Assembly: GCF_030028105.1 (NCBI RefSeq)
Contig: NC_092371.1
Coordinates: 14,715,884 to 14,779,883 of the forward strand
DNA length: 64,000 nt
DNA from: Mobula birostris
Lineage: Eukaryota
Direction of reading: 5' to 3'
The notes beneath the pieces were generated by a model. It worked only from the letters and a program-made list of their open reading frames with translations. It was not told where the DNA came from and made no database searches. Below, piece by piece: positions 8,064 to 49,568 of the stretch (position 1 is its first letter; the number at the start of each line of letters is the position of its first letter). A program made the position numbers and the translations under genes.

Positions 8064-8200
8064 NNNNNNNNNNNNNNNNNNNNNNNNNNNNNNNNNNNNN
8101 NNNNNNNNNNNNNNNNNNNNNNNNNNNNNNNNNNNNNNNNNNNNNNNNNNNNNNNNNNNNNNNNNNNNNNNNNNNNNNNNNNNNNNNNNNNNNNNNNNNN
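8064..8200. other. Assembly gap (137 N)
   Basis: Run of N in the sequence. Confidence 0.99.
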
Positions 8201-10117: not shown

Positions 10118-13100
10118 TAAGACCATGAGACATAAGTGCAGAATTAGGGCTTTTGGCGCGGCAAGTCTGATCTGGCATTCACTCATGGGTGATCCTTTTT
10201 TTCTCTCCTCTTCAGCCCCGGATCCCAGACTTCTCCCCATCATCTTTGATGCCATGTCCAATGAAAAACCTATCAATCTCTGCCTTATATATACTCAACG
10301 ACCCGGCCTCCACAGCTGCATGTGGCACCAAATTCCATAAATTCAACATCCTTTGGTTGAAGGAGTTTCTCCGCACCTCGGTTTTGAAAGGGCTCCCCAC
10401 TATCCTGAGGCTGTGCCCTCTTGTCCGAGATTTTCTCACCATGGGAAACATCCTTTCCACTCTGTCTAGGCAATTCAACATTCCAAAGGTTTCAATGAGA
10501 TGCCACCTCATCCTTCTGAATTCCAGTGTGTACAGATCCAGAGCTATTAAACTTTCCTCGTATGATAAACTTTTAATTCCTGGAATCATCATTGTGAACA
10601 TCCCCTGGAGCCTCTCCAATGCCAGCACATCCTTTCTAAGATAAGGAGCCCAAAACTGTTCACAATACTCAAGGTGAGGCCTCACCAGTGCCTTTTAAAA
10701 CCTCAGCATCACATACGTGCTTTTGCATTGGAGACCTCTTGAAATGAATGCTAACGTGGCATTTGCCTTCCTCACCACTGACACAAACTGGAAGTTAACC
10801 TTGAGGATGTTCAGCACAAGGACTCCCAAGTCCCTCTGCATCTCAGATTCCTTGATTTCTCCCCGTTTAGAAAATAGGCCACACATTTATTTCTACTACC
10901 AACGTGCATAACCATGCATTTTCCAACATTGTGTTTCATTTGCCACTTTCTTTCACATTCTCCTAACCTATGTCCTTTCCTCAACACTACATGCCTCTTC
11001 ACTAATCTTCGTATCGTCCGCAAACTTTATAACAAAGTCATCTATTCCATCATCTAAATCATTTGCATACAGCATAATGCAAGGTGGTCCTAAAAACGAC
11101 CCCTGCGGAACACCACTAGTCACTGGCAGCCAACCAGAAAAAGATTATTTTATTCCCAATCGCTGCCTCCTACCAATAGGCCAATGCTCTAACCAATTAT
11201 GTAACTTTTTGTAATACCATGGGCTCTTAACTTGGTAAGCAGCCTCATGTGTGGCACCTTGTCAAAAAGCCTTCTGAAGGCCCAAACACACAACATCCAC
11301 TGCATCCCTTTTATCCTACAAAGGTACTCGTAATCTCAAAGACTTGTAACAGTTTCGTCAGGCAGGATTTTCCCTGAAGGAAACCATGCTGATTTTGTAC
11401 TACGTTATCCTGTGTCAGCAGGTAGTCCATTACCTGATCCTTAACAATTGACTCTAACACCTTCCCAAACACTGAGGTCAGCTTAACTGGTCTATAACCT
11501 TTCTCTACTGCCTTCCTCATTTCTTAAAGAGTGGAGTAACATTTGAAATTTTACAGTCGACTGCTACCATGCCAGAGTCCAATTATTTTGGAAGATCATA
11601 TCTCATGCCACCACAGTCCCTAACGCTACCTCTTTTAAAACACTAGGGTGCAATTCCGCTGGTCCGAGTGACTTATGCACATTTCGGTCTTTCAGCCTTT
11701 TGAGCACCTTCTCTCTTGAAACAGTAACTGCACCCATTTCTCTTCCGTCACACACTGCAACATCACGCACACTGCTAGTGTCTTCCACAGTGAAAACTGA
11801 CGCAAAATACCTATTTAGTCCATCAGCTATTTTTTGTACCCCGTTAAGATTTCTCTTGCCTCATTTTCTAGCAGTCCTATATCCACTCTCATTTCTCTTT
11901 TAACATTCTTTATAAACGTTTACTGTCCACTTTGATATTATTTGCCAGCTTGCTTTCATATTTCATCTTTTCCCCTCTCTTGATATTTTGAGTTGTTCTC
12001 TGCAGTTTTTTTTAAACTTCCCAATCCTTTATCTTCCCACTAATATTTGCATTGTTGTATGCACTTTCTTTTGCTTTTACAATAGCTTTGACTTCCTTGT
12101 CAGCCATGGTTGCATTATTTAATCATTTGAGTATTTCTGCATTTTTGCAATACAAATATCTTGCACCTACCTCATTTCTCCGAGAAACGCACGTTATTGC
12201 CGCTCTACTGACATGCTTGCCAGCTGCTGCTTCCAGTTTACTTTGGCCAACTCCTCTCTCATACCACTGCAGTTTCCCTTCACTGAAATACTGCTGAATC
12301 AGACTTTACTTTTTCTCTGTCAAATTTGAAGTTGAACACAACTATATTGGGATGACTGCTTTCTCAAAGTTCTTTTACCTGAAGCTCGCTAATCACCTCC
12401 GGTTTATTACATAAAACCCAATCCAGTATGGTTGCTCCCCTGGTAGGCTCAACGAAAAAATTGCTCTAAAAAGCTTACTCTTGGACATTCAACAGTCTCA
12501 CTGTCTTGAGATCCATTCCCAACCTAATTTCCGCAACCGACCTGATTGATTAAACTCCATTAACTACATTGCTCTTTTGATTCGCCTTTTCGTTTTCCTT
12601 TTCTAACGTGTGGTTGATCTCCCAGCTTCTGTTGAGACGCCTGTATATAAGTGCCAGCAATGTCCTTTCACCTTTACAGTTCCTTAACTCAACCCATAAT
12701 GATTCAACATCTTCCAAACCTATGGCACATCTGATTTGATTTTACTCGTAGAGCCACACCACCCCATCTGCCTACCTTCCTATCCCTCCGATATAACGTA
12801 TAACCTTGGACATACAGCTCACAACTACAACCATCCTTCAGCCACGATTCACTGAGGGACACAACATCATACCGGCAATCTGTAATATTTCAACAGGATC
12901 ATTCACCTTATTTATTATACTACGCGCATTTAGATACAACACTTAAGTACGGGATTTGCTACCCTTTCTGAGTCTGTATCCCTAATGATTTGATACTCAG
13001 ACTGCTGCCTGCAACTAAGTCCCATCACCTGCGTGCACTTCCTGACAATCTGACTGCACGCTAACTTTAGATTTTTACTATCCATCCTATCCTGAGTCCC

Positions 13101-13716
13101 ATCAACACCGGTTCCCACCGATCTGACAAGTCAGTTGAAACCCTGCCCAACAGTCTTAACACACCCGTCCGCTAGAATATTGGTCACCCTCGGGTTCAGG
13201 TGCAACCCATCACTTTTGAGCAGGTCATACCTCCCCCAGAATAGAACCCAATTATACAAGAACCTGAAGCCCTGCCTGCTGCATCAGCTTCTCAGCCACG
13301 TATATTCTGCCAAATAGTCTTGGTTTTACCCTCACTAGCCTGTGCCGCAGGCAGCAATCCAGAAATTACTATTCGGGGGGTCCTGCTTCTCAGCTTTCTA
13401 CCTAGCTCTCGAAAGTCTCTTTTCAGGACCTCATATCTTTTTCTTCCCATAACATTGGTAGCAATATGTACAAAGAAATCTGGCTGCTCTCTCTCTGAGA
13501 CATGCCTGACCCTCGCACCTGGGAGGTAACATACTGTCCGGGTGTCCCGTTCAAGTCTACAGATTCGCCTCTCTGTCCCCCTCTTTATTGAGTACTCTTT
13601 ATCACTACCGCTCTTTTCTTCAATGTTTCACTTTCCCTTCTACATCACGGACCATGCTCAGTCCCTGTAACCCGGTCGTTGTAGCATTCTCCCGGGTGGT
13701 CATCCTCCACAAATCC
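10118..13716 (-). mobile_element. Degenerate CR1-type LINE (ORF1 esterase fragment, ORF2 APE/RT, 3' tail)
   Basis: Peptides [41 protein letters not shown] and QHGFLQGKSCLTKLL. An ORF1 esterase-region remnant is at 13320-13600. Many stops and frameshifts. Confidence 0.9.
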
Positions 13717-14330
13717 TCCCATGTAAAGATACGCGGGAGATTCACTGCCAGGAGGAGCATTCCTCATGGCCTGCTGCGTTGACTACTGCGTTGCCACTGC
13801 AACCCCTCTGCAAAACGACTGACCTCAATGTCTGACGTTAAAGGAAATTCTGCCCAGGCCCGCTTTAGAGACTTTAGAGAGTAAAAACACTTGTCGGTTG
13901 GAAGTGACAAGTTTCAGCGAATACCTCTATTCTCTCACAAGCAAAGCAGCGACTTGCTTTCCGCAGGAATGACAAATTCTCAGATAGGAACTGATGCATT
14001 GTCGAGGTGATTCTGGGATGGCATGGAGACTTTGTAGGAATTTGATATGACCTTTAAAAGCTTTGTTCTGATTAGCCATTCTGAGCAGAGACGAGGGGCC
14101 GAGTGCCAGCACCAGCCACACTCATTGTTCCAGAGGGAAGCAGCCGAAACAATGTCTAAAATAAGTTTACCTGAGTATTGTCCAAAGTTTTGCAGGCCTG
14201 GATATGTGATACAAACTGAAGGTGAAACAATCTTGAAAATTGGGGTTAAGGTTTGAAAAATCAGCAAGGTTGCTATTCAAAGTTTCCGAAGGTCAGCAAG
14301 TCAATCTCCGCCCACATTCTTTCCCTGTCA

Positions 14331-14361
14331 CCGCCCACTCATTTACATCACAATTAATAAA
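14331..14361 (+). promoter_or_regulatory. IgL copy 1 promoter: GC box, octamer-like ATTTACAT and TATA-like TTAATAAA
   Basis: CCGCCC 14331-14336, ATTTACAT 14341-14348 (Ig octamer consensus ATTTGCAT) and TTAATAAA 14354-14361, about 120-150 nt upstream of the ATG. The arrangement is conserved in copy 2. Confidence 0.6.
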
Positions 14362-14480
14362 CTGACCCGGAGACCCCAGTTTGTAGGCTCTGAAATCTGA
14401 GCAGTTCCCGTAGATTGCACAAACAGCGCATGATTCGGTTAGAGTTTTTGGGCGCTCGCTGTCTGCACCTGTCCGGAGGA

Positions 14481-14529
14481 ATGTCCCCAGCGCTGCATCT
14501 CCTGTGGGTTCTGCTGGTTCATTTAGCAG
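14481..14529 (+). CDS. Ig light chain (type I / sigma-cart) copy 1, leader exon
   Basis: Encodes the hydrophobic signal MSPALHLLWVLLVHLA plus one base, followed by a phase-1 donor G|GTGAGAG at 14530. Confidence 0.9.
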
Positions 14530-14635
14530 GTGAGAGTCGGATGGTTACCGCTGGGATTATCCGATAAAATTGGGATAACTACTAATTTTTATTTTTCTCC
14601 AAGTCAACCAGTGGTTTTATTCTGTTGTATCGGAG

Positions 14636-14989
14636 ATCTCCACGCGGCCCCAGTGCTCAGTCAGACCCCAATGTCCGGACCTGTTTCCGCGGGACAAACT
14701 GTCCGCTTAGACTGTCGAATGCAGAACGGTAATGTTGGAAGTTACTCCATGAACTGGTACCGAGAGCATCCCGGCGAGAGACCGGAGTGGGTGTTAGAAC
14801 ATTACCCAAACAATAATATATACCGAGGGACCGGTATCAAAGACCGTTTTGAATCGTCCAGAGACTCCTCCAGCAACAGTCACATCCTGACCATCAGCAG
14901 TTTGGAGCCCCGGGATTCCGCCGTCTATTACTGTGCAGCGTGGTACAATGGTGGTATCTTCGGTCCAGGCACCAGCCTAGATATTAAGA
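14636..14989 (+). CDS. Ig light chain (type I / sigma-cart, NS5-like) copy 1, germline-joined VJ exon; J donor mutated, frame continues to TGA at 14995-14997
   Basis: APVLSQTPMSGPVSAGQTVRLDC...MNWYRE...DSAVYYCAAWYNGGIFGPGTSLDIK has canonical Cys/Trp/YYC/FGxG. CRMQNGNVGSY and SRDSSSNSHILTIS resemble shark and skate type I V. No RSS lies between V and J. Confidence 0.93.
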
Positions 14990-16678
14990 ATAAGTGACTT
15001 CCTCATCCTGCTAACAACAATTCCTACTACAGCCACTCTCATTCTCCACAGCTGGATACAATCCTGTCCAGGGGAGACTTGTCATATATCTACACTGTGG
15101 GAAGTTCCATCCGTGTCTGTCTGGCACAAGAGACCCTTCACCCCATCCAGTCATCCTTAGCAATCAAATTAATGACCGTTTTATTTGTGAACAATTGTTT
15201 TTGTTGGGCACTTTCCGACCTCCCTCCTCTTTAACTCAATAGGCCTCATGGGTTCCGTTATTGGCATTGGTTTATTTTTGCCACTTTTCACAAGATGTAA
15301 TGAAAAGTTTGTTTTGCATACTGTCCATAAAGATCACATGATGACAATGGATTGAGTTGAACACAGCTTAATGCAGAATGAAACGAAACAGCCACAGAGA
15401 AAGTGCAGTGCAGGTAGGTAAGTTGCTAGATCAGAAGGAGGTAGATTGTGAGATCAATCGTCCATTTATCGTACCAGAGAACCATTTAATAGTTTATTAC
15501 AGCGGCCTCTCTATGATGTCGAATTAAACCAATCCCTACTGTCGACACAGATTCCATATCCCTCCATTGTCTGCACACTCATGTGTCCGTCCAACAGCTT
15601 CGTAAACTACCCTACCGTATCTGCCGCCGTCACCTCATGCACCCTCCACTATGTACAAAAAGTAAACATTCACCGAACTCCTCCTGTAAATTTTCCAACT
15701 CTAGGCTTAGAGCTCTGCCCCGGGGAAGACATCTTGACTATCGATTCTATCGCTACCTCCCATATTGTCTTGAGTAATGTTTACACATAATTGGGGAAAT
15801 GATTGTTACCACAACCATAACATTTACCCTTACCGCTTCATCCACCACCTCTGAGAGCATGTTTCTCGCGAATATTCCTTAATATTTCTGGGAGCGGTAA
15901 ATCCGGGACATAGGGCAGGATGTTCACCGCTTGACGTTAATGCAATTCACAGTTTGTGATTAAGAACCGTGCCATTATGATTGTAGAAAACCCAGGAGAA
16001 GTACACCAGCCTTTAAAAACAATACAAACTAGGAGAAGGTGCTCGGTAAAAAACAGGCTGGTCACAGAGTCGAGCGGCAATAGACGGGTTACTTGGGGTT
16101 CGGAATGCAATCTGAGTCTGAACGAGTAGTTTCGCCTCATCCCGCTTCTCACAGGATCACAGGCCTGTTCTTTTTCTCCATCATTTCCTCTTCAGTCACT
16201 GGGTACTGAGTCTTGGACATCCACTGAGCTTTCCCGAACTCGGGACACCCCAAGGAGCCTTCATTCTATCATCAACTGAATGTGTAATATCTCAGTTATT
16301 GTCCTAAGATGTCAGGATTTCGGGAGCAACTGGAGAAGAACAACGAAATGATCTCACAAATGGGACTAATCATATAGGCACAGTGTGGGGAATTAGCGAA
16401 GTGGTCGAGTAGATTTGAAGTTATCATTTAACACAATGCAGTGCCGAGAATTGAATGGATTCAAAAACATTCTTTGAAATAAATGAAGTCAAGTCGTAGC
16501 CGCGCAAGGCTGCGAATAATCCGGGCAACTCTTCATTCAAAGGTTTGTACCCGAGTGGTCAAATGTGCCGTATACTGTATCCCAATGCCTGTGTTAATTT
16601 TGGCGCTGGTGTTTCGATCTCTGAACAGTCCATGAAATAATATTGTTCCTATTTCTCTCCGTCTCCTCTCTCACACAG

Positions 16679-17007
16679 GTAACGAGTCCCGGGAGCACTC
16701 AGTTCTTCTGCTCCCTCCCTCTCCGGAGGAGACCGGCAGGGGTTCGGCCACTCTCTCATGTCTGGTGAGTGGTTTTAAGCCGGGCTTGGTAGCGCTGCGC
16801 TGGACTGTGGATGGAGTCCAGACGGAGAGCGGGGTGACAACAGGCGCTGTCTCCCTGGATACCGACCAGACCTACAGGCTGAGCAGTTACCTACGGGTAA
16901 CCACCGCTGCCTGGAACAAGGGCTCGAGCTATTCCTGCAGCGTGAGCCACAGCTCACTGAGCTCGCCGCTGAGCAACACCATCTCTTCGTCCGCCTGTGC
17001 GCAGTGA
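16679..17007 (+). CDS. Ig light chain constant (C1-set) exon, copy 1
   Basis: A polypyrimidine tract and CACACAG| precede the phase-1 start. Encodes NESREHSVLLLPPSPEE...ATLSCLVSGFKPG...WTVDG...YSCSVSH...SSACAQ*, with the penultimate-region Cys typical of light chains. Confidence 0.95.
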
Positions 17008-17296
17008 GACTGTGCCGGCTGACAGCACACGTGGATTACTTGCTCTTGTTTAGTGCAGTGAAGAAATCATTGGATCTGTAAAGCAGCCCAATGCAATGTA
17101 ATTGTGTAGCAATGTTCGCCTTTGCAAACAATCACGATGTTTAATGATTTCAGAAAAGTTGGCTTTAATAATCCATCTTTTGCGAAAGATAATTTTGTGT
17201 AGAATTGTCCCCACTGTGATGTGTCTGAACTACTGCTGTGTGTAGACTCAGGAGCGATCTCCCATATGTGTTTGGAATTTGTGTGACAATACTCTA

Positions 17297-17302
17297 AATA
17301 AA
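17297..17302 (+). terminator. Polyadenylation signal, IgL copy 1
   Basis: AATAAA about 290 nt after the stop, conserved in copy 2 (45490-45495). Confidence 0.7.
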
Positions 17303-18917
17303 AGAGGAAACAGCGGTAGATTTATCGTGTCTTGTCTTTACTTGGCAATGGCAGTATGTTGGGGATAATGGTCGTGGACAACGTGCCGTCTATGAGCCTC
17401 AATCAGAATTAAAATTCTATCGACTCCAAAATCTTATTCCGCTTTCTACTCTCTGTTTCCTGAGCTTTCTTTGTCCGTCAGCACTCATCCCGCATTCACT
17501 GGACCCTTCCATTCCTCGTCATCCTGCACTCTGCTCTTCATTTACAACCATCCCTGTGGGGGGAGATCAACATTCTCACTTCCTTATGGCCAACGTCTTA
17601 CCATCATTGGGGATGTTATACTGTAGGGATGTTACCCCGTGTCTTGACTGTTCTCTCCATCGATTCCGTTAGTTCCTGAATGAAGACCATCGGCTTCACT
17701 TCCCACCCTGATATCAACGCCACCACCCGCCACACCCACTCCCACACATTAGCTTCTATAACTCATAGTTATAATCAAAGTTAAAGGTAAATTTGTTATT
17801 AAAGTATGTATACGTCTTCATATGCGTCCATGAGTTTCATGTTCTTACAGGTATTCACAGAAGAATAAAGAAGTAGAATAGGTGCAACGAAAATCTACAC
17901 ACAAAGAATGAGAAACACAAAGACGAATAACCACGAATAAATAAATGGATAGATAGAAAAATAGACAGATAAATAAATAAAAAAACATGCAAGAATAGGT
18001 AAATCAATTACATTCAAACAATCATAAATAAATAAACAAACAAACAACCAGATAAAGGAATAACGGATAAATACATAAATAAAACTGAGGACATGAGTTT
18101 TAAAGTGAGTCTATAGATCGTGGAATCAGTTCAGAGATGCAGTGATTAAAGTCATCCGCTTTGTTTCAGGGGCCTGATGATTGAACTCTTTCTGAAACTT
18201 GTAGTGCGGGATCAAAGACTGTAATTGTCAGATGGGAGAGAGTTGCTGAAGCGCGAAACAAGTGTGAGATGACTGCAGAGACCCCTTTTAATTATGTTAA
18301 ATTTAAATCTTGTCTTATCAATAGCGTGGTCTTTATAGAGGGTGTGACTGATAAGACGACTGCAAGTGTTAGCCACGCACACCCAGCGATTTCAGTAACA
18401 TTTCACAAAATCATTTACGGTTGTCTGACCTGTTCATTTTTTTCAAGAATTTGGTGTAGAAATCTAACTTCGTCATTAATTAGGTTTTAATGTTGGTTGG
18501 ATGGCGTCAACCTGTTCCTGGACCGTGCTAATAAAACTATTTATGGATCTATACAGGGAAACGTGGGCGACGTTCGAGAAAATGAATCCTGTCCATAGGA
18601 TAGAAGTCAAATGAACGATCGGAAAGATGACGACCACACTTGGTTCACTGGAGCAATTAACATTTTTAACATTTTAAAACATCTTTGTAAATACTGGGAC
18701 GGTCAAGCGCATTATAAAACACTGAAAACAGAACAATCAATGAACATAAAATAGAATACATTAAATATTTTAAAACATTAGGTTTATTCGGCATACATAG
18801 AAACAAACAATGCAGTTTGCGTCAAATCAAATCCATTAGGATTGTACTGGGGACAGAACGGAAGTGTCACCACGTTTTTGGCGACAACATGTATCTATTT
18901 GATATTTATTCTTTTAC

Positions 18918-20155
18918 TATCATAGAGGGGGGCGCTGGTGAGCAGACCCAACTGCAAGTCACAAACACTTAAGTACTAGGAACAGGATTAGGTGTGTCGA
19001 GAAAGCAAGGAAAGTGGGCAAGAAAAGACGCTGGACAAGCCACAGGCCCAGGCCGAGACAAGGATACAGGGCATGGGCTAGGACTGGACTAGGAAAGAAG
19101 GACCTGGACAAGAAACAAGCAACTTGGAACCTGGACAAGGACTCCGAGCCAGAGACTGGACAGGAACCCGGAACCTGGGTCTTGACGCGGGCTCGGACTT
19201 CCGATCCAGGCGAGGACAAGACGTGGCAAAGCAACAGGACTGGACGTGGGGGCAGGACGCAGGACTCCTGGGCAGGACGCGGGACCAGAACTGGATGAGG
19301 ACACGAAGCTAAGACTTGGACTTGGGAGAATTGAACACTGAACACAGAACCGTGGTCTTCAGAGACAGGTACGCAGAGCACAGAGCCTCGGTAATCTTGG
19401 GAGACAGAAGCGCAGAACATAGAGCCTTGGTCTTGAGGGACAGGAAGGCAGAACACAAAGCCTTGGTCTTGAGAGACAGGAACATGGAACACAGAGCCGG
19501 GACCCCTCCTTGGAAACAGGACTTAGGGCCGGGACTCATAGACAGAAACCAGAGCCAGGACTCCTCTTTGGGAACAGGACGTAGGGCTGGGACTCGTACG
19601 CAGAATGCTGAACACGATGAGACGGTTCCCAGCACTAGGTTGCTGCAAACGGCCGGACCTACATAGCGAAGGCATGGACAGAGAGACTGTTCCCAACACA
19701 AATTTGTGTTAAACGGCCAGACCTACCTAGCGAAGGCGTGGACACGGAGACAGTTGCAAACAACGAAAGACAGTTCCTCATCTAGACACAACAGGGCTCC
19801 GGTCTTGCTCCGGCGGTAGAACTTGACGGCGAGAACGCAGGTGAAGCTTCAGACGAGGCTTCAGACGAAAGAAAGAAGGGAGGCTTCAGGCAAAAGGTAG
19901 CAGGCGAGATTTCAGTCAAAAGGTAGTAGGCGAGGCTACAACCAAGGGCTACAGAAGGAAGGGAAAGGAAGGGAAGCGAACAGTCTAGCCAATGAAGTTG
20001 AACTCAGGAGCTATTTATGTAGCCAGACCAAAATGAGAATCACGTGCCTCAATTAAGGCACACAACAGGACAAGAGAAAACCGGAAAACCTGGAATAAGG
20101 ATCGATGGACCGGTCCGTGATCCAGAATGCGGACTTCACGGACTGGACTATAATA
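18918..20155. mobile_element. Solo LTR (family A), opposite orientation to 5393-6520
   Basis: Reverse-complement homology to 5393-6520 end to end, decayed TATCA...TAATA termini and TSD TTTAC/TTCAC. The empty site is visible in copy 2 at ~43875-43890. Confidence 0.85.
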
Positions 20156-20404
20156 TTCACCTCTTTATCTGTCTTTATGTCTGTCTATCTATGCATCTAT
20201 CTGTCTACTAACTTATTCATTTATTTATTCATTCAGCGATACAGTGCGTAACAGAACTTTCTGGCCGAACTGACGCGCCGCCTAGCATCTCACTGTTTTG
20301 ACCCAATTGCAATCAGAGGACAATTTGCAATAACCAACTAACCTACTAACAGGTAATTCTTTTGACTGTAGAAGGAAACCAGAGAACCTAGACGATGCAG
20401 CACC

Positions 20405-20917
20405 TGTCAGTATCTCCAGTTGAACTTTGTCTTTTTGTGTGTTTTCCCCCGAACCCTCAGTCTGTGATTTTGTATTAACATGTGCTCTTGTTTGTTTTCA
20501 TGCCCCAAATGCCCCTGTCCCCGCTCCTGCTCTACTCCGGCCCCTGTATTACTGAGTACTCCGCCTCTCATCTGTTTCTCATTATTACCTGTTTTGCTGC
20601 CACTTCTGTCTCATTGTGTTTCACCTATCATCTGCCTCTCTGTTTATTGCTCAGTGTATTTTAGTCCTGTGTTTTCACCTGTTTGTTGTCAGGTTATGCC
20701 AGTGAATTTTCCTGAGTCTTTCCAGCATTGAATACCCATCTGAAATATCGACTCTGCCTGTTTCTCGATTCCACATTTTGCATTTCTCTGGATGATTAGA
20801 CCTCTGCCTGAACGTTAACGCCGACTTTGTTTGAACCTCGGGATTTGTTACTCAATTAATATCACTATATGAATGGCAATGGGTCTGCGAATGGATCCCT
20901 ATTCCAGCGTCCTGAGA
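20405..20917. mobile_element. Solo LTR (family B, ~513 bp)
   Basis: TGTCA...TGAGA termini and TSD GCACC/GCACG. Absent at the paralogous site (~43595-43615). Confidence 0.65.
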
Positions 20918-22214
20918 GCACGTTAAACTCGATAACTGCTATGTGGGTACTGTAGATAATTGGAAAATTTCATGAACATGTTTATAGCCTTTATTGAAAA
21001 GCGCCTGAAATGCACATGCAGAGAGTATTTGTTGCACATTTGCAATAAACATTTAAACATTATGGTTTACTGAATTACAAATAATACTGGGTATAAAACC
21101 TTAAGACTGCCCACTGGAAAGGTGAGCACTAATAATGTGGTGGCGATAATAGACAGCCATACACCGGGATGCAGTCTGTAACAACGAAACAATGTTGAGG
21201 TGCGCTTTCCTGCAACGCCTATTATCCCCTATTTGAATCCCCAGCATAAGACAGGAAGTACCAGAGCATTAGGACAAGGACTTTTCGGATGGGTAACAAC
21301 TTCTTTCCCCAGGACGTGAGACTGCTGAACTCCCTTCGACCACCCAGATCTCATCATGTCTGCAGTCTCAATAGCATCACAAAGCTTGGTTTCTGATTGG
21401 TGTCGTAAATGCACCTTATGCTGAATGTTAATTTTCTGGAATTTCTGTCATTATGTGTTAATTTATTTGTGTTATCATTATTTTCTGTGTTGTTTGTGAA
21501 TCATGTGCACCTTGTTGTGCACCTTAGTCCGGAGGAACTAAAGTTCGTTTGATTAAATGGCTATGAATCTGAACTGGAACTTCAAGACGGATGTGAAGGA
21601 CAATATATTTAGGCCAATGAGGGTTATAAAGTGGAGTAATCCGTCTTCAAGATGGCCTCAGATGGTGCCAATAAATGGCGTCTTTTAGCGAGCATCTCCG
21701 ATGGGAATAATAAAAAAATCCCATTTAGGACTGCTACAGCCAAAATCCATAGCCATTGATCCGTCACCAGATAACATCGGCGAACTCTATTGCCGCTGCT
21801 TCATCCTCCGAGTGTTACCAGCATTCTCTACTTCTCTTGATGCTTTGTTTTGCTTGGAAAATGTACTTGCATAATAATATAGATGTGGACACCCGGTGGG
21901 TGGAGCTTAACATAAGACCACAAGACATAGGAGCAGGAGCATGCCCTTCGGCCCATCGGGTCTACTCCGCCAATTATCATGGCTGGTCCAGGATCCCACG
22001 CAACCCCCTATACCTGACTATACGAATCATTGACTAGGATCTTGCTAAAGTCTTGGTGAACACCATGAAGTTCATTCACAAATTCCGAGTTTACCAAAAG
22101 GGCTATATTCTAGATTGGTGCCCTCCTTCACTTGGATACATCCGTTCAGCCACTCATTGACTGTTTATCTCTTTCTTGCCTGAAGGGTGATCACACTTTG
22201 TCGTCTTCTACTAA

Positions 22215-40149: not shown

Positions 40150-42240
40150 CACACGCACTGAAAAGCTTGAGCATGTGGATATTAAGATAGAGGATGTGCA
40201 AGAGCTATTGAAAAGCATCAATTTGGATAAGAGACCGGGATCAGACGTGATGTACCCCAGGCTAATGTAGGAGGCGAGGGATGAGGTTGCTGAGCCTCTG
40301 ACGGGGATGTTTGCATCGTCAATGGGGACGGGAGATGTTCCAGAGGATTGGAGGGTTGCGGATGTCTTTCCATTATTCAAGCAACGGACTAGAGATGGTC
40401 CAGGGAATTATAGAGCAGTGAGTCCTACTTCAGTGGTCGGTAAGTTGATGGAGAAGAGCCTGAGAGGCAGGATTTGTGAACATTTGGAGAGGCATAATAT
40501 GATTAGGAATAGTCAGCAATTTCATAAAGAGTAAAAGCGAGGTTAGAATTGCTATTGTACAACTGGAAAATGATTCTGGTTATGTAGTAATGGGGGTCAA
40601 AGAAATGGCAGATGATCTTAATTGGTATTTTGCATTTGTCTTCCCTGTTGGTGACACTGGCAGTATGCCAGAGGTCTGTAGGTGTTATGGAGCTGGAGTG
40701 TGTCATTACAATTACAAATGAAAAAGTGGTAGACAACTGAAAGATCTTAAGAGAGAGGTTACGGAAGGGTTAACAGATGCATTGGTCATGATCTTTCAAG
40801 AATCATTTCATTCTGGCATGGTCTCGGAGGGCTAGGAAATTGAAAGTTCACTTTAAGAAAGGAAATTGCATGCTCGTTAGCCTAACTTCAGTGGTTGGAC
40901 ACGATTGGAGTATATTAATGAGGATGAGGTGTCGGGGTTCTTGGAGACTAATGATAAAATAAGTCAAAAACAGCATGACTTCTGCAAAGAGAAATCTTAC
41001 AATAATCTGTTAGTTCTTGGAGAAAGTAACAAGCAGTGTGGACAAAAGAGAGGCAGTGGAAGTCATTAACTTGGATTATAAGAAGGCGTTTGATAAGATG
41101 CCACACATGAAGCTTCTTAGCAAGATGAAATTCTACAGGAAAGATACTACTGGCGTGAATAACGGAGTGGCTGACAGGCGGGAGGCCGCGAATGGGAGTA
41201 AAAGGAGCCTTTTATGATTGGCTGCCGGTGACTATGAGTGTCAGAGGTCAGTACTAGGAGCGCTACTTTTCATATTGATTGTCAGTGATTTAGATAATGG
41301 AATTAGTGGCTTTGTGGCAAAGTGTGCAGATGATATGAAGATAGGTGGAGGATACGTAGTGCTGAGGAAGCAATGTGATTGCAGCACGACTTACACAAAT
41401 TGAAAGAATGGGCAAAAAGTGGCAAGTTGAATACAGTGTTGAGAAATATATGATTGTGCAGTTTGGTAAAAATATACAATGGTGCGGACTGTTATCTAAA
41501 TGAGGAGAGAGTTCAAACATCAGAGACGCAAAGAGACTTCGGAGTCCCCCTGAAAGACTCCGAGAAGGTTCATTTACCGGCTGGGTCTGTGGTAGAGAAA
41601 ACAATTGCAATTTTGGCACTTATTTCAAGGGGAATAGAATATAAAAAGAAGGAGATGATGCTGAACCTTGAAAAGTCAGTAGTCATGCTGCAATTGGAGT
41701 ATTGTCAAGAGTTTCGGGCCCAATATCTCAGAAAGGACATGCTGTCATTGGAGAGAATCCAGAAGAGGTTCGCGTGGATGATTCCGAGAATGAAGGGATG
41801 AACATATGAGGAGCGTTTGGTAGCTTTGGGCCAGTACTCACCGGAATTTAGAAGAATGCGGGAGCTCTCATTGAAACCAACCGAATTTTGAAAGGAATAG
41901 ATAGGATGGGTGTGGAGACGATGTTTCCTATGTTAAGGATTTGCAGAGTTAGAGGCACAGTATCAAAAAAGGCGCTCCTTTGGAAAAGAAGGAAGGAGGA
42001 ATTCTTTTTAGCCAAAGAGTAATAAATCTGTGGAATCTTCTGGCACAGACTGCTGTGCAGGTCAGGTCCATGGGAATATTTAAGGCGGAACTTGATAGCT
42101 TCCTGATCCGTCAGGGCACCAAGGGATATGGCGAGAAGGCAGGTTTACGGAGTTGAGTGGGATCCGGCATCAGCCATGATAAAACGGCAGAGCAGACTCG
42201 ATGGGCCGAATGGCCTACTTCTGCTCCTATGTCTTATGTA
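40150..42240 (+). mobile_element. Composite CR1 LINE fragments (RT and 3' tail)
   Basis: Peptides GDVPEDWRVADVF, LDYKKAFDKMPH and LQLEYCQEF. The tail is GGCCGAATGGCCTACTTCTGCTCCTATGTCTTATG. Confidence 0.85.
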
Positions 42241-45783: not shown

Positions 45784-46112
45784 TCACTGCGCACAGGCGG
45801 ACGAAGAGATGGTGTTGCGCAGCGGCGAGCTCAGTGAGCTGTGGCTCACGCTGCAGGAATAACTCGAGCCTTTGTTCCAGGCAGCGGTGGTTACTCGCAG
45901 GTAACTGCTCAGCCTGTAGTTCTGGTCGGTGTCCAGGGAGACAGCTCCTGTCGTCACGCCGCTCTCTGTCTGAACTCCATCCACGCTCCAGCGCAGCACT
46001 ACCAAGCCTGGCTTAAAGCCACTCACCAGACAGGAGAGAGTGGCCGAACCCGTGCCGGTCTCCTCCAGAGAGGGAGGGAGTAGCAGAACCGAGGGCTCCC
46101 GGGAATTGCTAC
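45784..46112 (-). CDS. Ig light chain constant exon, copy 2
   Basis: A CACACAG| acceptor precedes an open frame SNSREPSVLLLPPSLEE...SCLVSGFKPG...YSCSVSH...SSACAQ*. It differs from copy 1 at 9 of 109 aa (manual count). Confidence 0.95.
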
Positions 46113-47021
46113 CTGTGTGTGAGAGGAGATGAAAGGGAATAGAAACAGTATTATTTCATGGACTGTTCAGAGACAGAAACACCAGAGCCGAAACTAACAT
46201 AGGAATTGCAACACAGTATGCGGCACATGTGACCTCTCGGGTACAGACCTTTGAATGAAGAGTTGCCCTGATTATTCGCAGTCTTGAGCGGCTACAGTGT
46301 GACAACATTTATATAAATACAATAGTTTTGAATCGACTCTGCTCTCGGCATGCTTTGTGTCAAAAGATAACTTCAACAGTACTCAATTTCTTTGCTGACT
46401 GCGCACACCGTGCCCATATGATTGGTCCCTCTAGTGAGACCAGTTCCTTGTTCTTCTCCAAGAACTCCCCAAATCTTGAACTCTTAGGGCTATAACTGAG
46501 AATATTACACCTTCAGTTAATGAAAGAAAGAAGGCTTCTTGGGATGACCCGAGTTCGGGAAAGCTCATTGTATATCCAAGACTAGGTACCCAGAGACAGG
46601 AAAAAGAGCTGGTCTGTGAACTGGTGAGAAGCGCGGATAGGCGAAACGACTCGTTCGGAACCAGATTGCATTCCGGACCCGTACTCACCCACCTATTGCA
46701 GCTCGACTCTGACACCAGCCTGTTGTCTGCCCAGCATATTCCCCTAGTATATAATATTTTCAGTCCGATGTTTTCCTCCTGTGTTTTCTACAATCATAAT
46801 GACAGGGCAGTTCTTCATCACAAACTGCGAATTGCGTTAGCTTGAAGCAGTAAATATCCCGCGCTGTGGTCCAGGATTTACGGCACCCAGAAAAATTCTG
46901 GAATATTCATGACAAACATGTTCTCAAAAGTGGTGAATGAAGAGTGCAGGATAGATGTCATGCTTATGGTAGCGATCATTTTCCCAAATTATGTATGAGC
47001 ATTTTTCAAGAAAGTATGAGA

Positions 47022-48271
47022 GAAATTACAAATTTTTGAGGAAATTACAAGTAGGCTAGGCAAGGGATGTTGTATATTTGGATTTTCAGAAGGCCTTTGA
47101 TAAGGTGCCACACATGAGGCTATATAACAAGATAAGAGCCCATGGAATTACGGGAAAGTTACATACGTGGATGGAGCGTTGGCTGATTGATAGGAAACAG
47201 AGAGTCGGAATAAAGGGATCCTATTCTGGTTGGCTGCTGGTTACCAGTGGTGTTCCACGGGGGTCCGTGTTGGGGCCGCTTCTTCTTACGTTGTACATCA
47301 GCGATTTCGATTATGAAATAGTTGTCTTTGTGGCTAAGTTTGCTGATAATACGAAGATGGGTGGAGGGGCCAGTAGTGCTGAGGAAATAGAGAGTCTGCG
47401 GAGAGAATTGTATAGATTGGAAGAATGGGCAAAGAATTGGCAAAAGAAATACAATGTTGGAAAGTATATGGTTGTGCACTTTGGCAGAAGAAATAAACGG
47501 GCAGACTATTATTTAAATGGAGAGAAAATTCAAAGTTTTGAGATGGAACGGGACTTGGAAGTCGTCGTGCAGCATACCCTTAAGGTTAACTTCCAGGTTG
47601 AGTTGGTGGTGAAGAAGGCGAATACAATGTTGGCGTTCATTTCTAGAGGAATAGAGTATAGGAGCAGGGATGTGATGTTGACGCTCTATAAGGCGCTGGT
47701 GAGACCTCACTTGGAGTACTGTGGGCAGTTTTAGTCTCCTTATTAAAGAAAGGATGTGCTGACGTTGGAGAGGCTACAGACAAGATTCACTAGAATGATT
47801 CCGGGAATGAGAGGGTTAACATATGAGGAACGTTTGTCCGCTGTTGGACTGCATTCCTTGGAGCTTAGCAAAATGAGGGGGGGACCTCATAGAAACATTT
47901 CGAATGTTGAAAGGCATGGACAGAGTGGATGTGATAAAGTTGTTTCCCATGATGGGGGCGTCCAGTACGAGAGGGCATGACTTAAGGATTGAAGGGCGCC
48001 CATTCAGAACAGAGATGCGAAGATATTTTTTTTTTAGCCAGATGGTGGTGAATCTATGGAATTTTTTGCCACGGGCGGCAGTGGAGGCCAGGTCATTGGG
48101 TGTATTTAAGGTAGAGATTGATAGGTCTCTGAGTAGCCAGGGTATCAAAGATTATGGTGAGAAGGCGGGGGACTGGGACTAAATGGAAGAATGGATCAGC
48201 TCATGATGAAATGGCGGAGTAGACTGGATGGGCCGAATGGCCGACTTCTGCTCATTTGTCTTATATTCTTA
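47022..48271 (+). mobile_element. 5'-truncated CR1 LINE in the J-C intron of copy 2 (antisense to the gene)
   Basis: ORF 47078-47734 (DFQKAFDKVPH, KFADNTK) and a CR1 tail. Absent from copy 1 at ~15755. Confidence 0.9.
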
Positions 48272-49071
48272 TAGCGATACGATCGACAGTCAAGATTTTT
48301 TCCCCAAGGGCAGAAATCTAAGCCAAGAGGAGGAAAATTTACAGGAGAACTGCGGCGAATGTTTATTTTGTGTACAGAGTGTAGGGTGCATGAGCTGGAG
48401 GAGGTAGATACGATAGGGTCGTTTAAGAAGCTGTTAGACGGAGATAGGATGTGCTGAAAATGAAGGGATATGGAGTATGTGTAAACAGCAGGGATTGGTT
48501 TAATTTGACATCATCCAGATCCGCTGTAACAAGATATTGAATGGTTCTCTAGTGCGCTAAGATAGACGATTCACCTCACAAATTGCTTCCTTATGATCTT
48601 GCAACTTATCTACCTGCATTGCACTTCCTCTGACACTGTTACTTTTTATTCTATGTTAAGCTGTGTTTAACTCAATGCACTGTCATCACGTGATCTTGAT
48701 GGACAGTATGCAGGAAAGCCTTTCAATGCATCTTGTGAAAAGTGGCAAAAGTAAACCAATACTAATAATACAAAGTACGGGGCCTATTGTGTTAAGGAGA
48801 AGGGATGTCGGAAAATATTGAATTCTGCTACACCGGCTTAAGTAGAACAAAATTGTCCAGCAAAAAATGTTCACAAGTCAAGCGATCAGTAATTCGACTT
48901 TTCGGGCTGACTCGATGGGCTGAACGGCCTCCTGTGCCAGACTGAAACAGATGGAAACTCCCACAGTGTAGATATATGACAAGTCTCCCCTGGAAGGAGT
49001 TTTAGCAAGCTGCGGGGAACAAGAGTGGCTGTAGTAGGAATTGTTTGGAACAGAATGAGGGAGACACTTAC

Positions 49072-49425
49072 TCTTAATATCCAGGATAGTGCCTTGACCG
49101 AAGATAAATCCATTATCCCACCCTGCACAGTAATAGACGGCGGAATCGCGGGGTTCCAGTCTGCTGATGGTCAGGATATGACTGTTGCTGGAGGAGTCTC
49201 TGGACGGTTGAAAACTTTGAGTGATCCCTGTCCCTCGGGCAATTCCATTGTTTGTGTAATGTTCTAACATCCACTCCGGTCTCTGCCCGGGACGCTGTCG
49301 GTGCCAGCACATGTAGTAACTTCCAACATTACAGTTCTGTATCCGACACTCTAAGCGGACGGTCTGTACCGCGGAAACAGGTCCGCACATTGGGGGCTGA
49401 TTGAGCACTGCGGCCGCGGAGATAT
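49072..49425 (-). CDS. Ig light chain (type I / sigma-cart) copy 2, germline-joined VJ exon; open frame, but the gene's leader donor is defective (possible pseudogene)
   Basis: TTGCAG| acceptor, then AAVLNQPPMCGPVSAVQTVRLEC...MCWHRQ...DSAVYYCAGWDNGFIFGQGTILDIK, then an intact donor A|GTAAGT at 49071. Confidence 0.92.
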
Positions 49426-49519
49426 CTGCAATGAATCACAATAAAACCACTGGGTGACTTGTAGCAAAATAAAAATCAGCAGTAATCCCAATTTTAACGG
49501 ATAATCATCCGACTCTCAG

Positions 49520-49568
49520 CTGGTAAATGAACCAACAGAACCCACAGGAGATGCAGCTCTGGGGACAT
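49520..49568 (-). pseudogene. Ig light chain copy 2 leader exon with mutated splice donor (GT>CT)
   Basis: Encodes MSPELHLLWVLLVHLP plus G, followed by CTGAGAG where copy 1 has GTGAGAG. Read-through hits TAA after ...ESRMIIR. Confidence 0.85.

What the first reader, a model, noticed from the sequence alone, without database searches (positions are those of the whole stretch)
14989..16684. IgL copy 1 has lost its J splice donor, and both rescue routes give the same secreted VJ-only protein
Seen: the J donor reads A|ATAAGT (14990-14995) where copy 2 has A|GTAAGT. Read-through gives ...LDIK-N-K-TGA (stop 14995-14997). The only nearby GT (14994, AA|GTGACT) spliced to the C acceptor (|GTAACG, 16679) gives AAG AAT AA|G TAA, again ...LDIK-N-K-stop, now in the last exon and so not an obvious NMD target. 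The promoter, leader exon and its donor, and the V framework (both Cys, Trp, DRF, YYC, FGxG) are intact. An AATAAA at 16478-16483 is copy-1 specific (TATAAA in copy 2). Inference: this locus could make a 136-aa precursor of a free, germline-fixed light-chain V domain with no C. Alternatively it is a very recent pseudogene.
Basis: partly seen in the sequence, partly recalled or inferred. Interest (0 to 1): 0.8.

Follow-up and report, generated by a model that had tools for sequence, protein, structure and literature searches.

The report
Manta-ray light-chain gene, dead splice site
One of the manta ray's many ready-joined antibody light-chain genes has a single-base change that kills the splice site joining its variable and constant parts. 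It is most likely a very young dead gene, not a new free-standing antibody domain.

Summary
Copy 1 (ATG 14481, VJ exon 14636-14989, C exon 16679-17007) reads A|ATAAGT where copy 2 reads A|GTAAGT. Read-through and the cryptic GT at 14994 both give a 136-aa ...LDIKNK product. DNA-run contigs of the same species match with no differences.

The window is Mobula birostris: copy 2's conceptual protein is 100% identical to an NCBI model from that assembly. The family is the lambda (type II) light chain, which is germline-joined in all cartilaginous fish studied.

The Mobula hypostoma orthologue has the same leader, the same CDR3-J and nearly the same gene span. It is annotated as an intact 243-aa VJ-C chain, so the lesion is probably lineage-specific and recent. 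Coding decay is not yet visible.

Four RNA runs carry huge lambda expression. None has a contig at 97% likeness or better over copy 1's CDR3, J, donor or intron, and no rescue junction appears. No protein model exists for copy 1.

V-exon skipping, a third outcome, was overlooked.

Verdict: a young pseudogene or null allele. The secreted V-only protein is possible on paper but unsupported. The scan noted other light-chain pseudogenes nearby in this genome.

The parts
14341..14361 (+). Octamer-like ATTTACAT (14341-14348) and TATA-like AATTAATAAA (14352-14361) upstream of copy 1
   Evidence: Read directly. Copy 2 has the same ATTTACAT. RNA contig depth of the family starts in bin 14394-14487. Promoter function is inferred, not tested.
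14430..14432 (+). Upstream in-frame ATG (MIRLEFLGARCLHLSGG-), in weak context
   Evidence: The same 17-aa extension is used in NCBI models of the paralogues P0002 and P0003.
14481..14529 (+). Leader exon of copy 1 (MSPALHLLWVLLVHLA + 1 nt), donor GTGAGA intact
   Evidence: Identical to the leader of the M. hypostoma orthologue P0001. A GT..AG joint 14530-14635 is seen in RNA contigs at 95% likeness or better, and these may come from paralogues.
14636..14989 (+). Germline-joined VJ exon (V-set domain, CDR3-J CAAWYNGGIFGPGTSLDIK), open frame, no RSS
   Evidence: Pfam V-set E=3e-17. 95% identical to P0001. It departs from family near-invariant columns at 3 of 110 over the whole chain, which is within the range of annotated members.
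14990..14995 (+). Dead J splice donor ATAAGT (G>A at +1)
   Evidence: Copy 2 has GTAAGT. DNA contig X4 14914-15096 shows 0 differences.
14994..14997 (+). Cryptic GT (14994-14995, TAA|GTGACT, 5/9 to consensus) overlapping the in-frame stop TGA (14995-14997)
14990..16678 (+). J-C intron (1689 nt)
   Evidence: RNA contig depth is 0 across 15052-16649 in X1-X3, except for a repeat at 15334-15427.
16478..16483 (+). Intronic AATAAA
   Evidence: One found against 0.8 expected by composition. No RNA coverage around it.
16679..17007 (+). C-lambda exon with intact acceptor (cacag|GT) and stop TGA at 17005-17007
   Evidence: Pfam C1-set E=5.5e-24. Open frame of 108 codons.
17297..17302 (+). Likely normal poly(A) signal AATAAA of the 3' UTR
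   Evidence: Read directly. Inferred. 3' UTR bin 17026-17100 has depth 0 in X1 and X3 and 391 in X2.
45784..49568 (-). Copy 2: leader 49568-49520, dead leader donor CT at 49519-49518, weak cryptic GT at 49513-49512, VJ exon 49425-49072 with intact donor GTAAGT, C exon 46112-45784
   Evidence: The conceptual protein is 100% identical to P0014 (Mobula birostris, 245 aa), whose 'PAEN' N-terminus shows the NCBI model uses the cryptic GT. Its gene span of 3785 bp equals 49568-45784.

Best explanation
Copy 1 is an unprocessed, very young pseudogene, or a null allele not yet known to be fixed. It is a germline-joined lambda (type II) light-chain cluster of the giant manta ray. A single G>A change at intron position +1 abolishes the J donor, so no full VJ-C light chain can be made. 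Any transcripts would be aberrant: V-exon skipping, intron retention or weak cryptic splicing. They are expected to be rare and without function. The rest of the gene looks intact only because too little time has passed for further decay. Shown: the lesion, its confirmation in DNA contigs, the family assignment and the intact protein model in the sister species. Inferred: that the locus is functionally dead and that the lesion is recent.
For: Lesion and its consequences. No in-frame donor keeps FR4. DNA contigs agree with the base. Family: V-set plus C1-set, and the best hits are ray and shark lambda chains, including Heterodontus 'lambda light chain'. Lambda/type II genes are germline-joined in all cartilaginous fish studied, and pseudogene clusters occur in these families (PMC5192425). 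One of them carries a splice-signal defect (PMC2193156). Orthologue P0001 (M. hypostoma) has an identical leader and CDR3-J, a gene span of 2528 against 2527 bp, and is modelled as an intact 243-aa VJ-C. Amino-acid changes number 5 on this lineage against 4 on the hypostoma lineage. There are 3 departures at 110 near-invariant columns, against a family median of about 3. Both counts fit recent inactivation. The M. birostris annotation is in the protein collection, since copy 2 equals P0014. It holds no protein more than 95% like copy 1's V. RNA: in four runs with family depth up to about 4.7e5, depth is 0 at 97% likeness or better over 14947-15060. Depth is 0 in the intron, and there is no 14989/14993>16679 or 14529>16679 joint. 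The neighbouring cluster also has a dead donor, so splice-site decay is not unusual here.
Against: The frame, both Cys, Trp, YYC, FGPG, the leader and the C exon are all intact, and there is no excess of substitutions, so constraint cannot be excluded. RNA absence rests on Logan contigs, which drop rare variants. In run X1, some contig 95-97% alike reaches into the J bin 14958-15051 (depth 205). Run X2 shows depth 391 on the 3' UTR bin. Either could be low-level copy 1 transcription or a close paralogue. The orthologue's DNA could not be read, so its GT donor is inferred from the protein model.
Confidence: 0.8

Rival explanations
1. The locus makes a functional, secreted, germline-fixed V-only light-chain domain of 136 aa. 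It does so by read-through or by the cryptic GT at 14994. The product acts alone or as a surrogate-like partner of heavy chains.
For: Both routes give the same open 136-aa product with a signal peptide and a complete V domain. The stop lies in the last exon, or no downstream junction exists, so classical NMD is avoided (inference). Cartilaginous fish lack known surrogate light-chain genes (PMC9614664), so a niche is conceivable. No coding decay is visible.
Against: No read-through, intronic coverage or cryptic junction appears in four RNA runs with very high lambda expression. The intronic AATAAA is at chance frequency. The cryptic donor lacks G at -1 and at +5. The orthologue is an ordinary VJ-C chain, so a V-only state is not conserved. 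Two of the five lineage-specific changes lie in the C exon, and none suggests a remodelled VH interface. No protein model exists in the annotation.
Confidence: 0.05
2. Residual transcripts mainly skip the VJ exon, the usual outcome of a +1 donor mutation in an internal exon. That yields an in-frame leader-C 'V-less' chain of 125 aa, with or without any role.
For: Both introns are phase 1, so leader to C is in frame and gives 125 aa. Exon skipping is the commonest consequence of 5' splice-site loss under exon definition (established splicing knowledge).
Against: No 14529>16679 joint appears in any RNA run, although the leader and C exons are covered at huge depth. Contigs can miss rare forms.
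Confidence: 0.07
3. The A at 14990 is an assembly or sequencing error, or the donor is restored at RNA level by A-to-I editing, so the gene is really functional.
For: The DNA run that confirms the base may be the assembly's own sample (caveat).
Against: An independent contig assembly of the reads gives A with 0 differences over 14914-15096. The RNA around the site has no unusual structure (z=0.14), so it is not an evident ADAR substrate. No spliced VJ-C contig with copy 1's CDR3-J was found. The annotation pipeline produced no model here.
Confidence: 0.03

Closest known systems
Pseudogene clusters among cartilaginous-fish light-chain miniloci (for example nurse shark NS4 R6, R19, S5 and the sigma-2 pseudogene locus)
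   Same: One cluster of a multi-cluster L-VJ-C family is disabled by a small lesion while its neighbours stay functional. A splice-signal defect is already on record for nurse shark S5 (PMC2193156; PMC5192425).
   Different: This is the lambda/type II isotype of a batoid (Mobula). The only lesion is the J donor +1 base, and no stop or frameshift has accumulated yet.
Mobula hypostoma 'immunoglobulin lambda-1 light chain-like' (P0001, GCA_963921235.1)
   Same: It is the orthologue. Leader and CDR3-J are identical, identity is 95.4% overall, and the ATG-to-stop span is the same.
   Different: It is modelled as an intact 243-aa VJ-C chain. The window's copy cannot splice J to C.
VpreB (the V-only component of the mammalian surrogate light chain)
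   Same: A germline-encoded, non-rearranging V-type domain without its own C domain.
   Different: VpreB lacks the J strand, carries a unique tail, pairs with lambda5 and is conserved as such in eutherians (PMC9614664). Here the J is complete, the tail is two residues, the orthologue is VJ-C, and no expression was seen.

Membership tests
Cartilaginous-fish lambda (type II / NS3) germline-joined light-chain cluster | One V-set domain and one C1-set domain in an L / VJ / C three-exon unit | tested here: met
   Pfam V-set 3e-17 and C1-set 5.5e-24. Exon layout.
Cartilaginous-fish lambda (type II / NS3) germline-joined light-chain cluster | V and J fused in the germline with no RSS or intervening DNA | tested here: met
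   A continuous open frame runs from FR1 through YYC-CDR3-FGPGTSLDIK within one exon.
Cartilaginous-fish lambda (type II / NS3) germline-joined light-chain cluster | Closest relatives are lambda/type II chains of other elasmobranchs | tested here: met
   32 hits were found. All but one of those carrying an isotype name are called lambda (P0012 is named kappa light chain-like). They include Heterodontus 'lambda light chain of immunoglobulin', P0028. No formal isotype tree was built.
Cartilaginous-fish lambda (type II / NS3) germline-joined light-chain cluster | Functional J donor that joins VJ to C | tested here: not met
   AT replaces GT at 14990-14991. The locus is therefore a member of the family by descent but not a working gene.
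Pseudogene (unprocessed) | A lesion that prevents the normal product | tested here: met
   Donor +1 G>A, and no alternative in-frame donor keeps FR4.
Pseudogene (unprocessed) | Loss of expression | tested here: inconclusive
   Depth is 0 on the locus-specific CDR3-J and on the intron in 4 RNA runs. These are assembled contigs, and weak signals 95-97% alike remain unexplained.
Pseudogene (unprocessed) | Relaxed constraint compared with functional relatives | tested here: not met
   5 against 4 lineage changes, and 3 of 110 near-invariant departures, which is within the family range. This is expected if inactivation is very recent.
V-only surrogate-type chain (VpreB-like) | The V-only architecture is conserved across species | tested here: not met
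   The orthologue in M. hypostoma is VJ-C.
V-only surrogate-type chain (VpreB-like) | A transcript and protein of the V-only form exist | tested here: inconclusive
   None was seen in contigs of 4 RNA runs. Proteomics is not testable with these tools.

The most novel reading that the evidence does not exclude
The donor loss turned an ordinary germline-joined lambda chain into a secreted 136-aa free VL domain, or a V-less leader-C chain. The manta ray expresses it at some life stage or in some tissue not sampled here. It could act, for example, as a surrogate-like partner for nascent heavy chains, in a lineage that has no known surrogate light chain.
Probability: 0.05. Interest if true: 0.65.

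Novelty: new member of a known kind. Interest (0 to 1): 0.15.

Why it matters
As found, it matters little. It is one more disabled cluster in a multi-copy antibody gene family, useful mainly for annotating the manta ray's light-chain repertoire and for dating gene loss between Mobula species. It also warns that open frames and intact motifs do not make a working cluster, since both clusters in this window have a dead splice donor. If the V-only product were real, it would be a natural example of a free light-chain V domain born by a single mutation. It could then bear on how surrogate-type chains arise.

Tried and rejected
- The C-exon protein search found nothing, because full-length chains fall outside the tool's length limits.
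- The PDB sequence search of the C domain was swamped by multi-domain heavy chains and gave no isotype information.
- The DNA of the M. hypostoma orthologue and of the M. birostris record could not be fetched because the files are too large. No dN/dS and no direct reading of the orthologous donor were therefore possible.
- Both read-laying runs went to RNA and DNA of the window's own species.
- A-to-I editing was rejected for lack of RNA structure.
- The intronic AATAAA as a purpose-built signal was rejected as a chance-level occurrence.
- The first impression that copy 2 is heavily decayed was not borne out. It departs at 4 of 110 near-invariant columns, within the family range.
- A family-HMM scan found no further light-chain exons in the window.
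- A literature search for Mobula immunoglobulin genes found nothing relevant.

Full report
**What is there**

The window holds two light-chain clusters in inverted orientation.

- Copy 1 lies on the + strand. Its parts are an ATG at 14481, a leader exon to 14529, a leader intron 14530-14635, a VJ exon 14636-14989, a J-C intron 14990-16678, and a C exon 16679-17007.
- Copy 2 lies on the - strand. Its ATG is at 49568, its VJ exon is 49425-49072 and its C exon is 46112-45784.
- A family-specific HMM scan of all six frames finds no other light-chain exon in the 64 kb.
- The duplicated unit runs from about 11735-21000 against 53750-43526, at about 80% identity. Exons are more alike: C 92%, VJ 85%.

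**The observation**

- Position 14990 is A, so the J donor reads AAG A|ATAAGT. Copy 2 has AAG A|GTAAGT.
- Read-through gives AAT AAG TGA.
- Using the GT at 14994 with the C acceptor gives AA|G TAA.
- Both routes give the same 136-aa product ending LDIKNK.
- The AATAAA at 16478-16483 is present, and copy 2 has TATAAA there. One such hexamer in a 1689-nt intron is what base composition predicts (0.8 expected).
- Contigs built independently from a DNA run of the same species match the window with no differences wherever they lie within 14513-17100 (two short stretches have no listed piece). One contig spans 14914-15096. That run may come from the assembly's own animal (caveat printed).
- So the base is not an assembler slip. 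Its frequency in the species is unknown.

1. Copy 2, used as the intact reference, has its own dead splice site. Its leader donor reads CAG|CTGAGA where copy 1 has CAG|GTGAGA.
2. In-frame cryptic donors exist upstream of the dead J donor. GT sites lie at 14954 and 14963, and GC sites at 14969 and 14975. Each would delete part or all of FR4, so none restores a proper VJ-C chain.
3. Both introns are phase 1. Skipping the VJ exon is the usual result of a +1 donor mutation in an internal exon (established splicing knowledge). It would give an in-frame leader-C product of 125 aa.

**Identity of the gene and the genome**

- The pieces are a V-set and a C1-set domain.
- A search with the stop-free frame around the VJ exon returned 32 ray and shark light chains, nearly all named lambda. 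One is Heterodontus 'lambda light chain of immunoglobulin'.
- Copy 2's conceptual protein is 100% identical to P0014, an NCBI model of Mobula birostris (GCA_030028105.1). That model's gene span of 3785 bp equals 49568-45784.
- The window is therefore giant manta ray.
- P0014 begins ...HLPAEN-ISAAA. This shows the NCBI model rescues copy 2 with a weak cryptic GT 6 nt downstream of the dead donor.
- Reviews state that lambda/type II genes are germline-joined in every cartilaginous fish studied and that the cluster families contain pseudogenes (PMC5192425).
- Lee et al. list nurse-shark pseudogene clusters, including one with a defective splice-signal pair (PMC2193156).

**The orthologue**

- P0001 of Mobula hypostoma has the same leader (MSPALHLLWVLLVHLAD-LHAAP) and the same CDR3-J (CAAWYNGGIFGPGTSLDIK). 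Its overall identity to copy 1 is 95.4%.
- Its ATG-to-stop span is 2528 bp, against 2527 bp here.
- It continues ...DIK-S-SESWEL... into a full C domain of a 243-aa chain.
- I could not read its DNA. That its donor is GT is inferred from the gene model.
- No M. birostris protein more than 95% like copy 1's V exists in the collection, although that assembly's annotation is clearly in it. So the annotation pipeline made no protein here, and there is no intact twin.

**Age of the lesion**

- I polarised the 11 amino-acid differences between copy 1 and P0001 with twelve close paralogues. Five fall on the window's lineage, four on the hypostoma lineage, and two are ambiguous.
- At 110 near-invariant family columns, copy 1 departs three times. 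The annotated family members have a median of about three.
- So there is no acceleration and no further damage. This fits a lesion much younger than the species split.
- By itself this cannot separate 'young and dead' from 'still constrained'.

**Expression**

- Four RNA runs of the same species carry this family at word depths up to about 4.7e5 over FR3. Depths over the C exon reach about 5e5 in the three of these runs also laid.
- At 97% likeness or better, depth falls to 0 from 14947 through 15060. That stretch covers copy 1's CDR3, J, dead donor and early intron.
- At 95%, the intron is empty from 15052 to 16649 in three runs, apart from a repeat.
- No joint from 14989, 14993 or 14529 to 16679 is listed.
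- The 3' UTR bin 17026-17100 has depth 0, 391 and 0 in X1, X2 and X3.
- The same tables do show the CDR3-J of other, expressed paralogues as loose ends. Expressed junction regions are therefore visible by this method.
- Two weak signals remain unexplained: depth 205 in bin 14958-15051 of X1 at 95-97% likeness, and the X2 3' UTR signal.
- These are assembled contigs that drop rare variants. The result says 'not appreciably expressed', not 'silent'.

**Other readings tested**

The RNA around the donor has no unusual fold (z=0.14), so A-to-I repair of the donor has no support.

A VpreB-like role is conceivable in a lineage without known surrogate light chains (PMC9614664). Against it:

- The J strand is complete.
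- The tail is only two residues.
- The orthologue is an ordinary VJ-C chain.
- The lineage-specific changes are split between the V and C exons, with no sign of a remodelled interface.

**Verdict**

- The best explanation, at about 0.8, is a very young unprocessed pseudogene or null allele of a germline-joined lambda cluster. It sits next to a second cluster with a different dead donor.
- The secreted V-only protein is an arithmetical possibility without supporting evidence (about 0.05).
- Earlier notes of this scan flag further light-chain pseudogenes a few kb and about 108 kb beyond this window. I did not check them.

Noticed in passing
window 49512-49520 (- strand): Copy 2's leader donor is CT instead of GT. 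The NCBI model P0014 (245 aa, '...HLPAEN...') uses a weak cryptic GT 6 nt downstream (AGA|GTCGGA). Copy 2 may therefore also be non-functional despite being annotated as coding. Its V also has unusual Cys residues (PMCGP, QNCNV, YMCW) and QSF in place of DRF.
   Followed up: partly
window 14430-14480 (and 49617-49569 on - strand): A conserved upstream in-frame ATG adds 17 residues (M[IV]R.EFLGARCLHLSGG) before the signal peptide. NCBI models of the paralogues P0002 and P0003 start there. Its context is weaker than that of the second ATG.
   Followed up: no
window 47065-48271; also 10118-11298 and 41040-42238: A 1.2-kb interspersed repeat is inserted in copy 2's J-C intron, which is why that intron is 3.0 kb against 1.7 kb in copy 1. 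Two more copies, 66-72% alike, lie elsewhere in the window.
   Followed up: no
window 11735-21000 vs 53750-43526: The two clusters lie in an inverted duplication of about 9-10 kb at about 80% identity, so the duplicated unit is far larger than the gene.
   Followed up: partly
window 17026-17100 and 14958-15051: Weak RNA contig signals 95-97% alike appear: depth 391 on the 3' UTR in run X2 only, and depth 205 reaching J in run X1 only. They could be low-level copy 1 transcripts, alleles or a close paralogue.
   Followed up: no
window 8064-8200: A run of 137 N (assembly gap or masked).
   Followed up: no
M. hypostoma locus of P0001 (no DNA), 5-10 kb upstream, opposite strand: The neighbouring called gene is a 364-aa V-set plus C1-set protein. 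It probably belongs to the non-rearranging VJ-C1 receptor family that earlier notes of this scan describe around this window.
   Followed up: no
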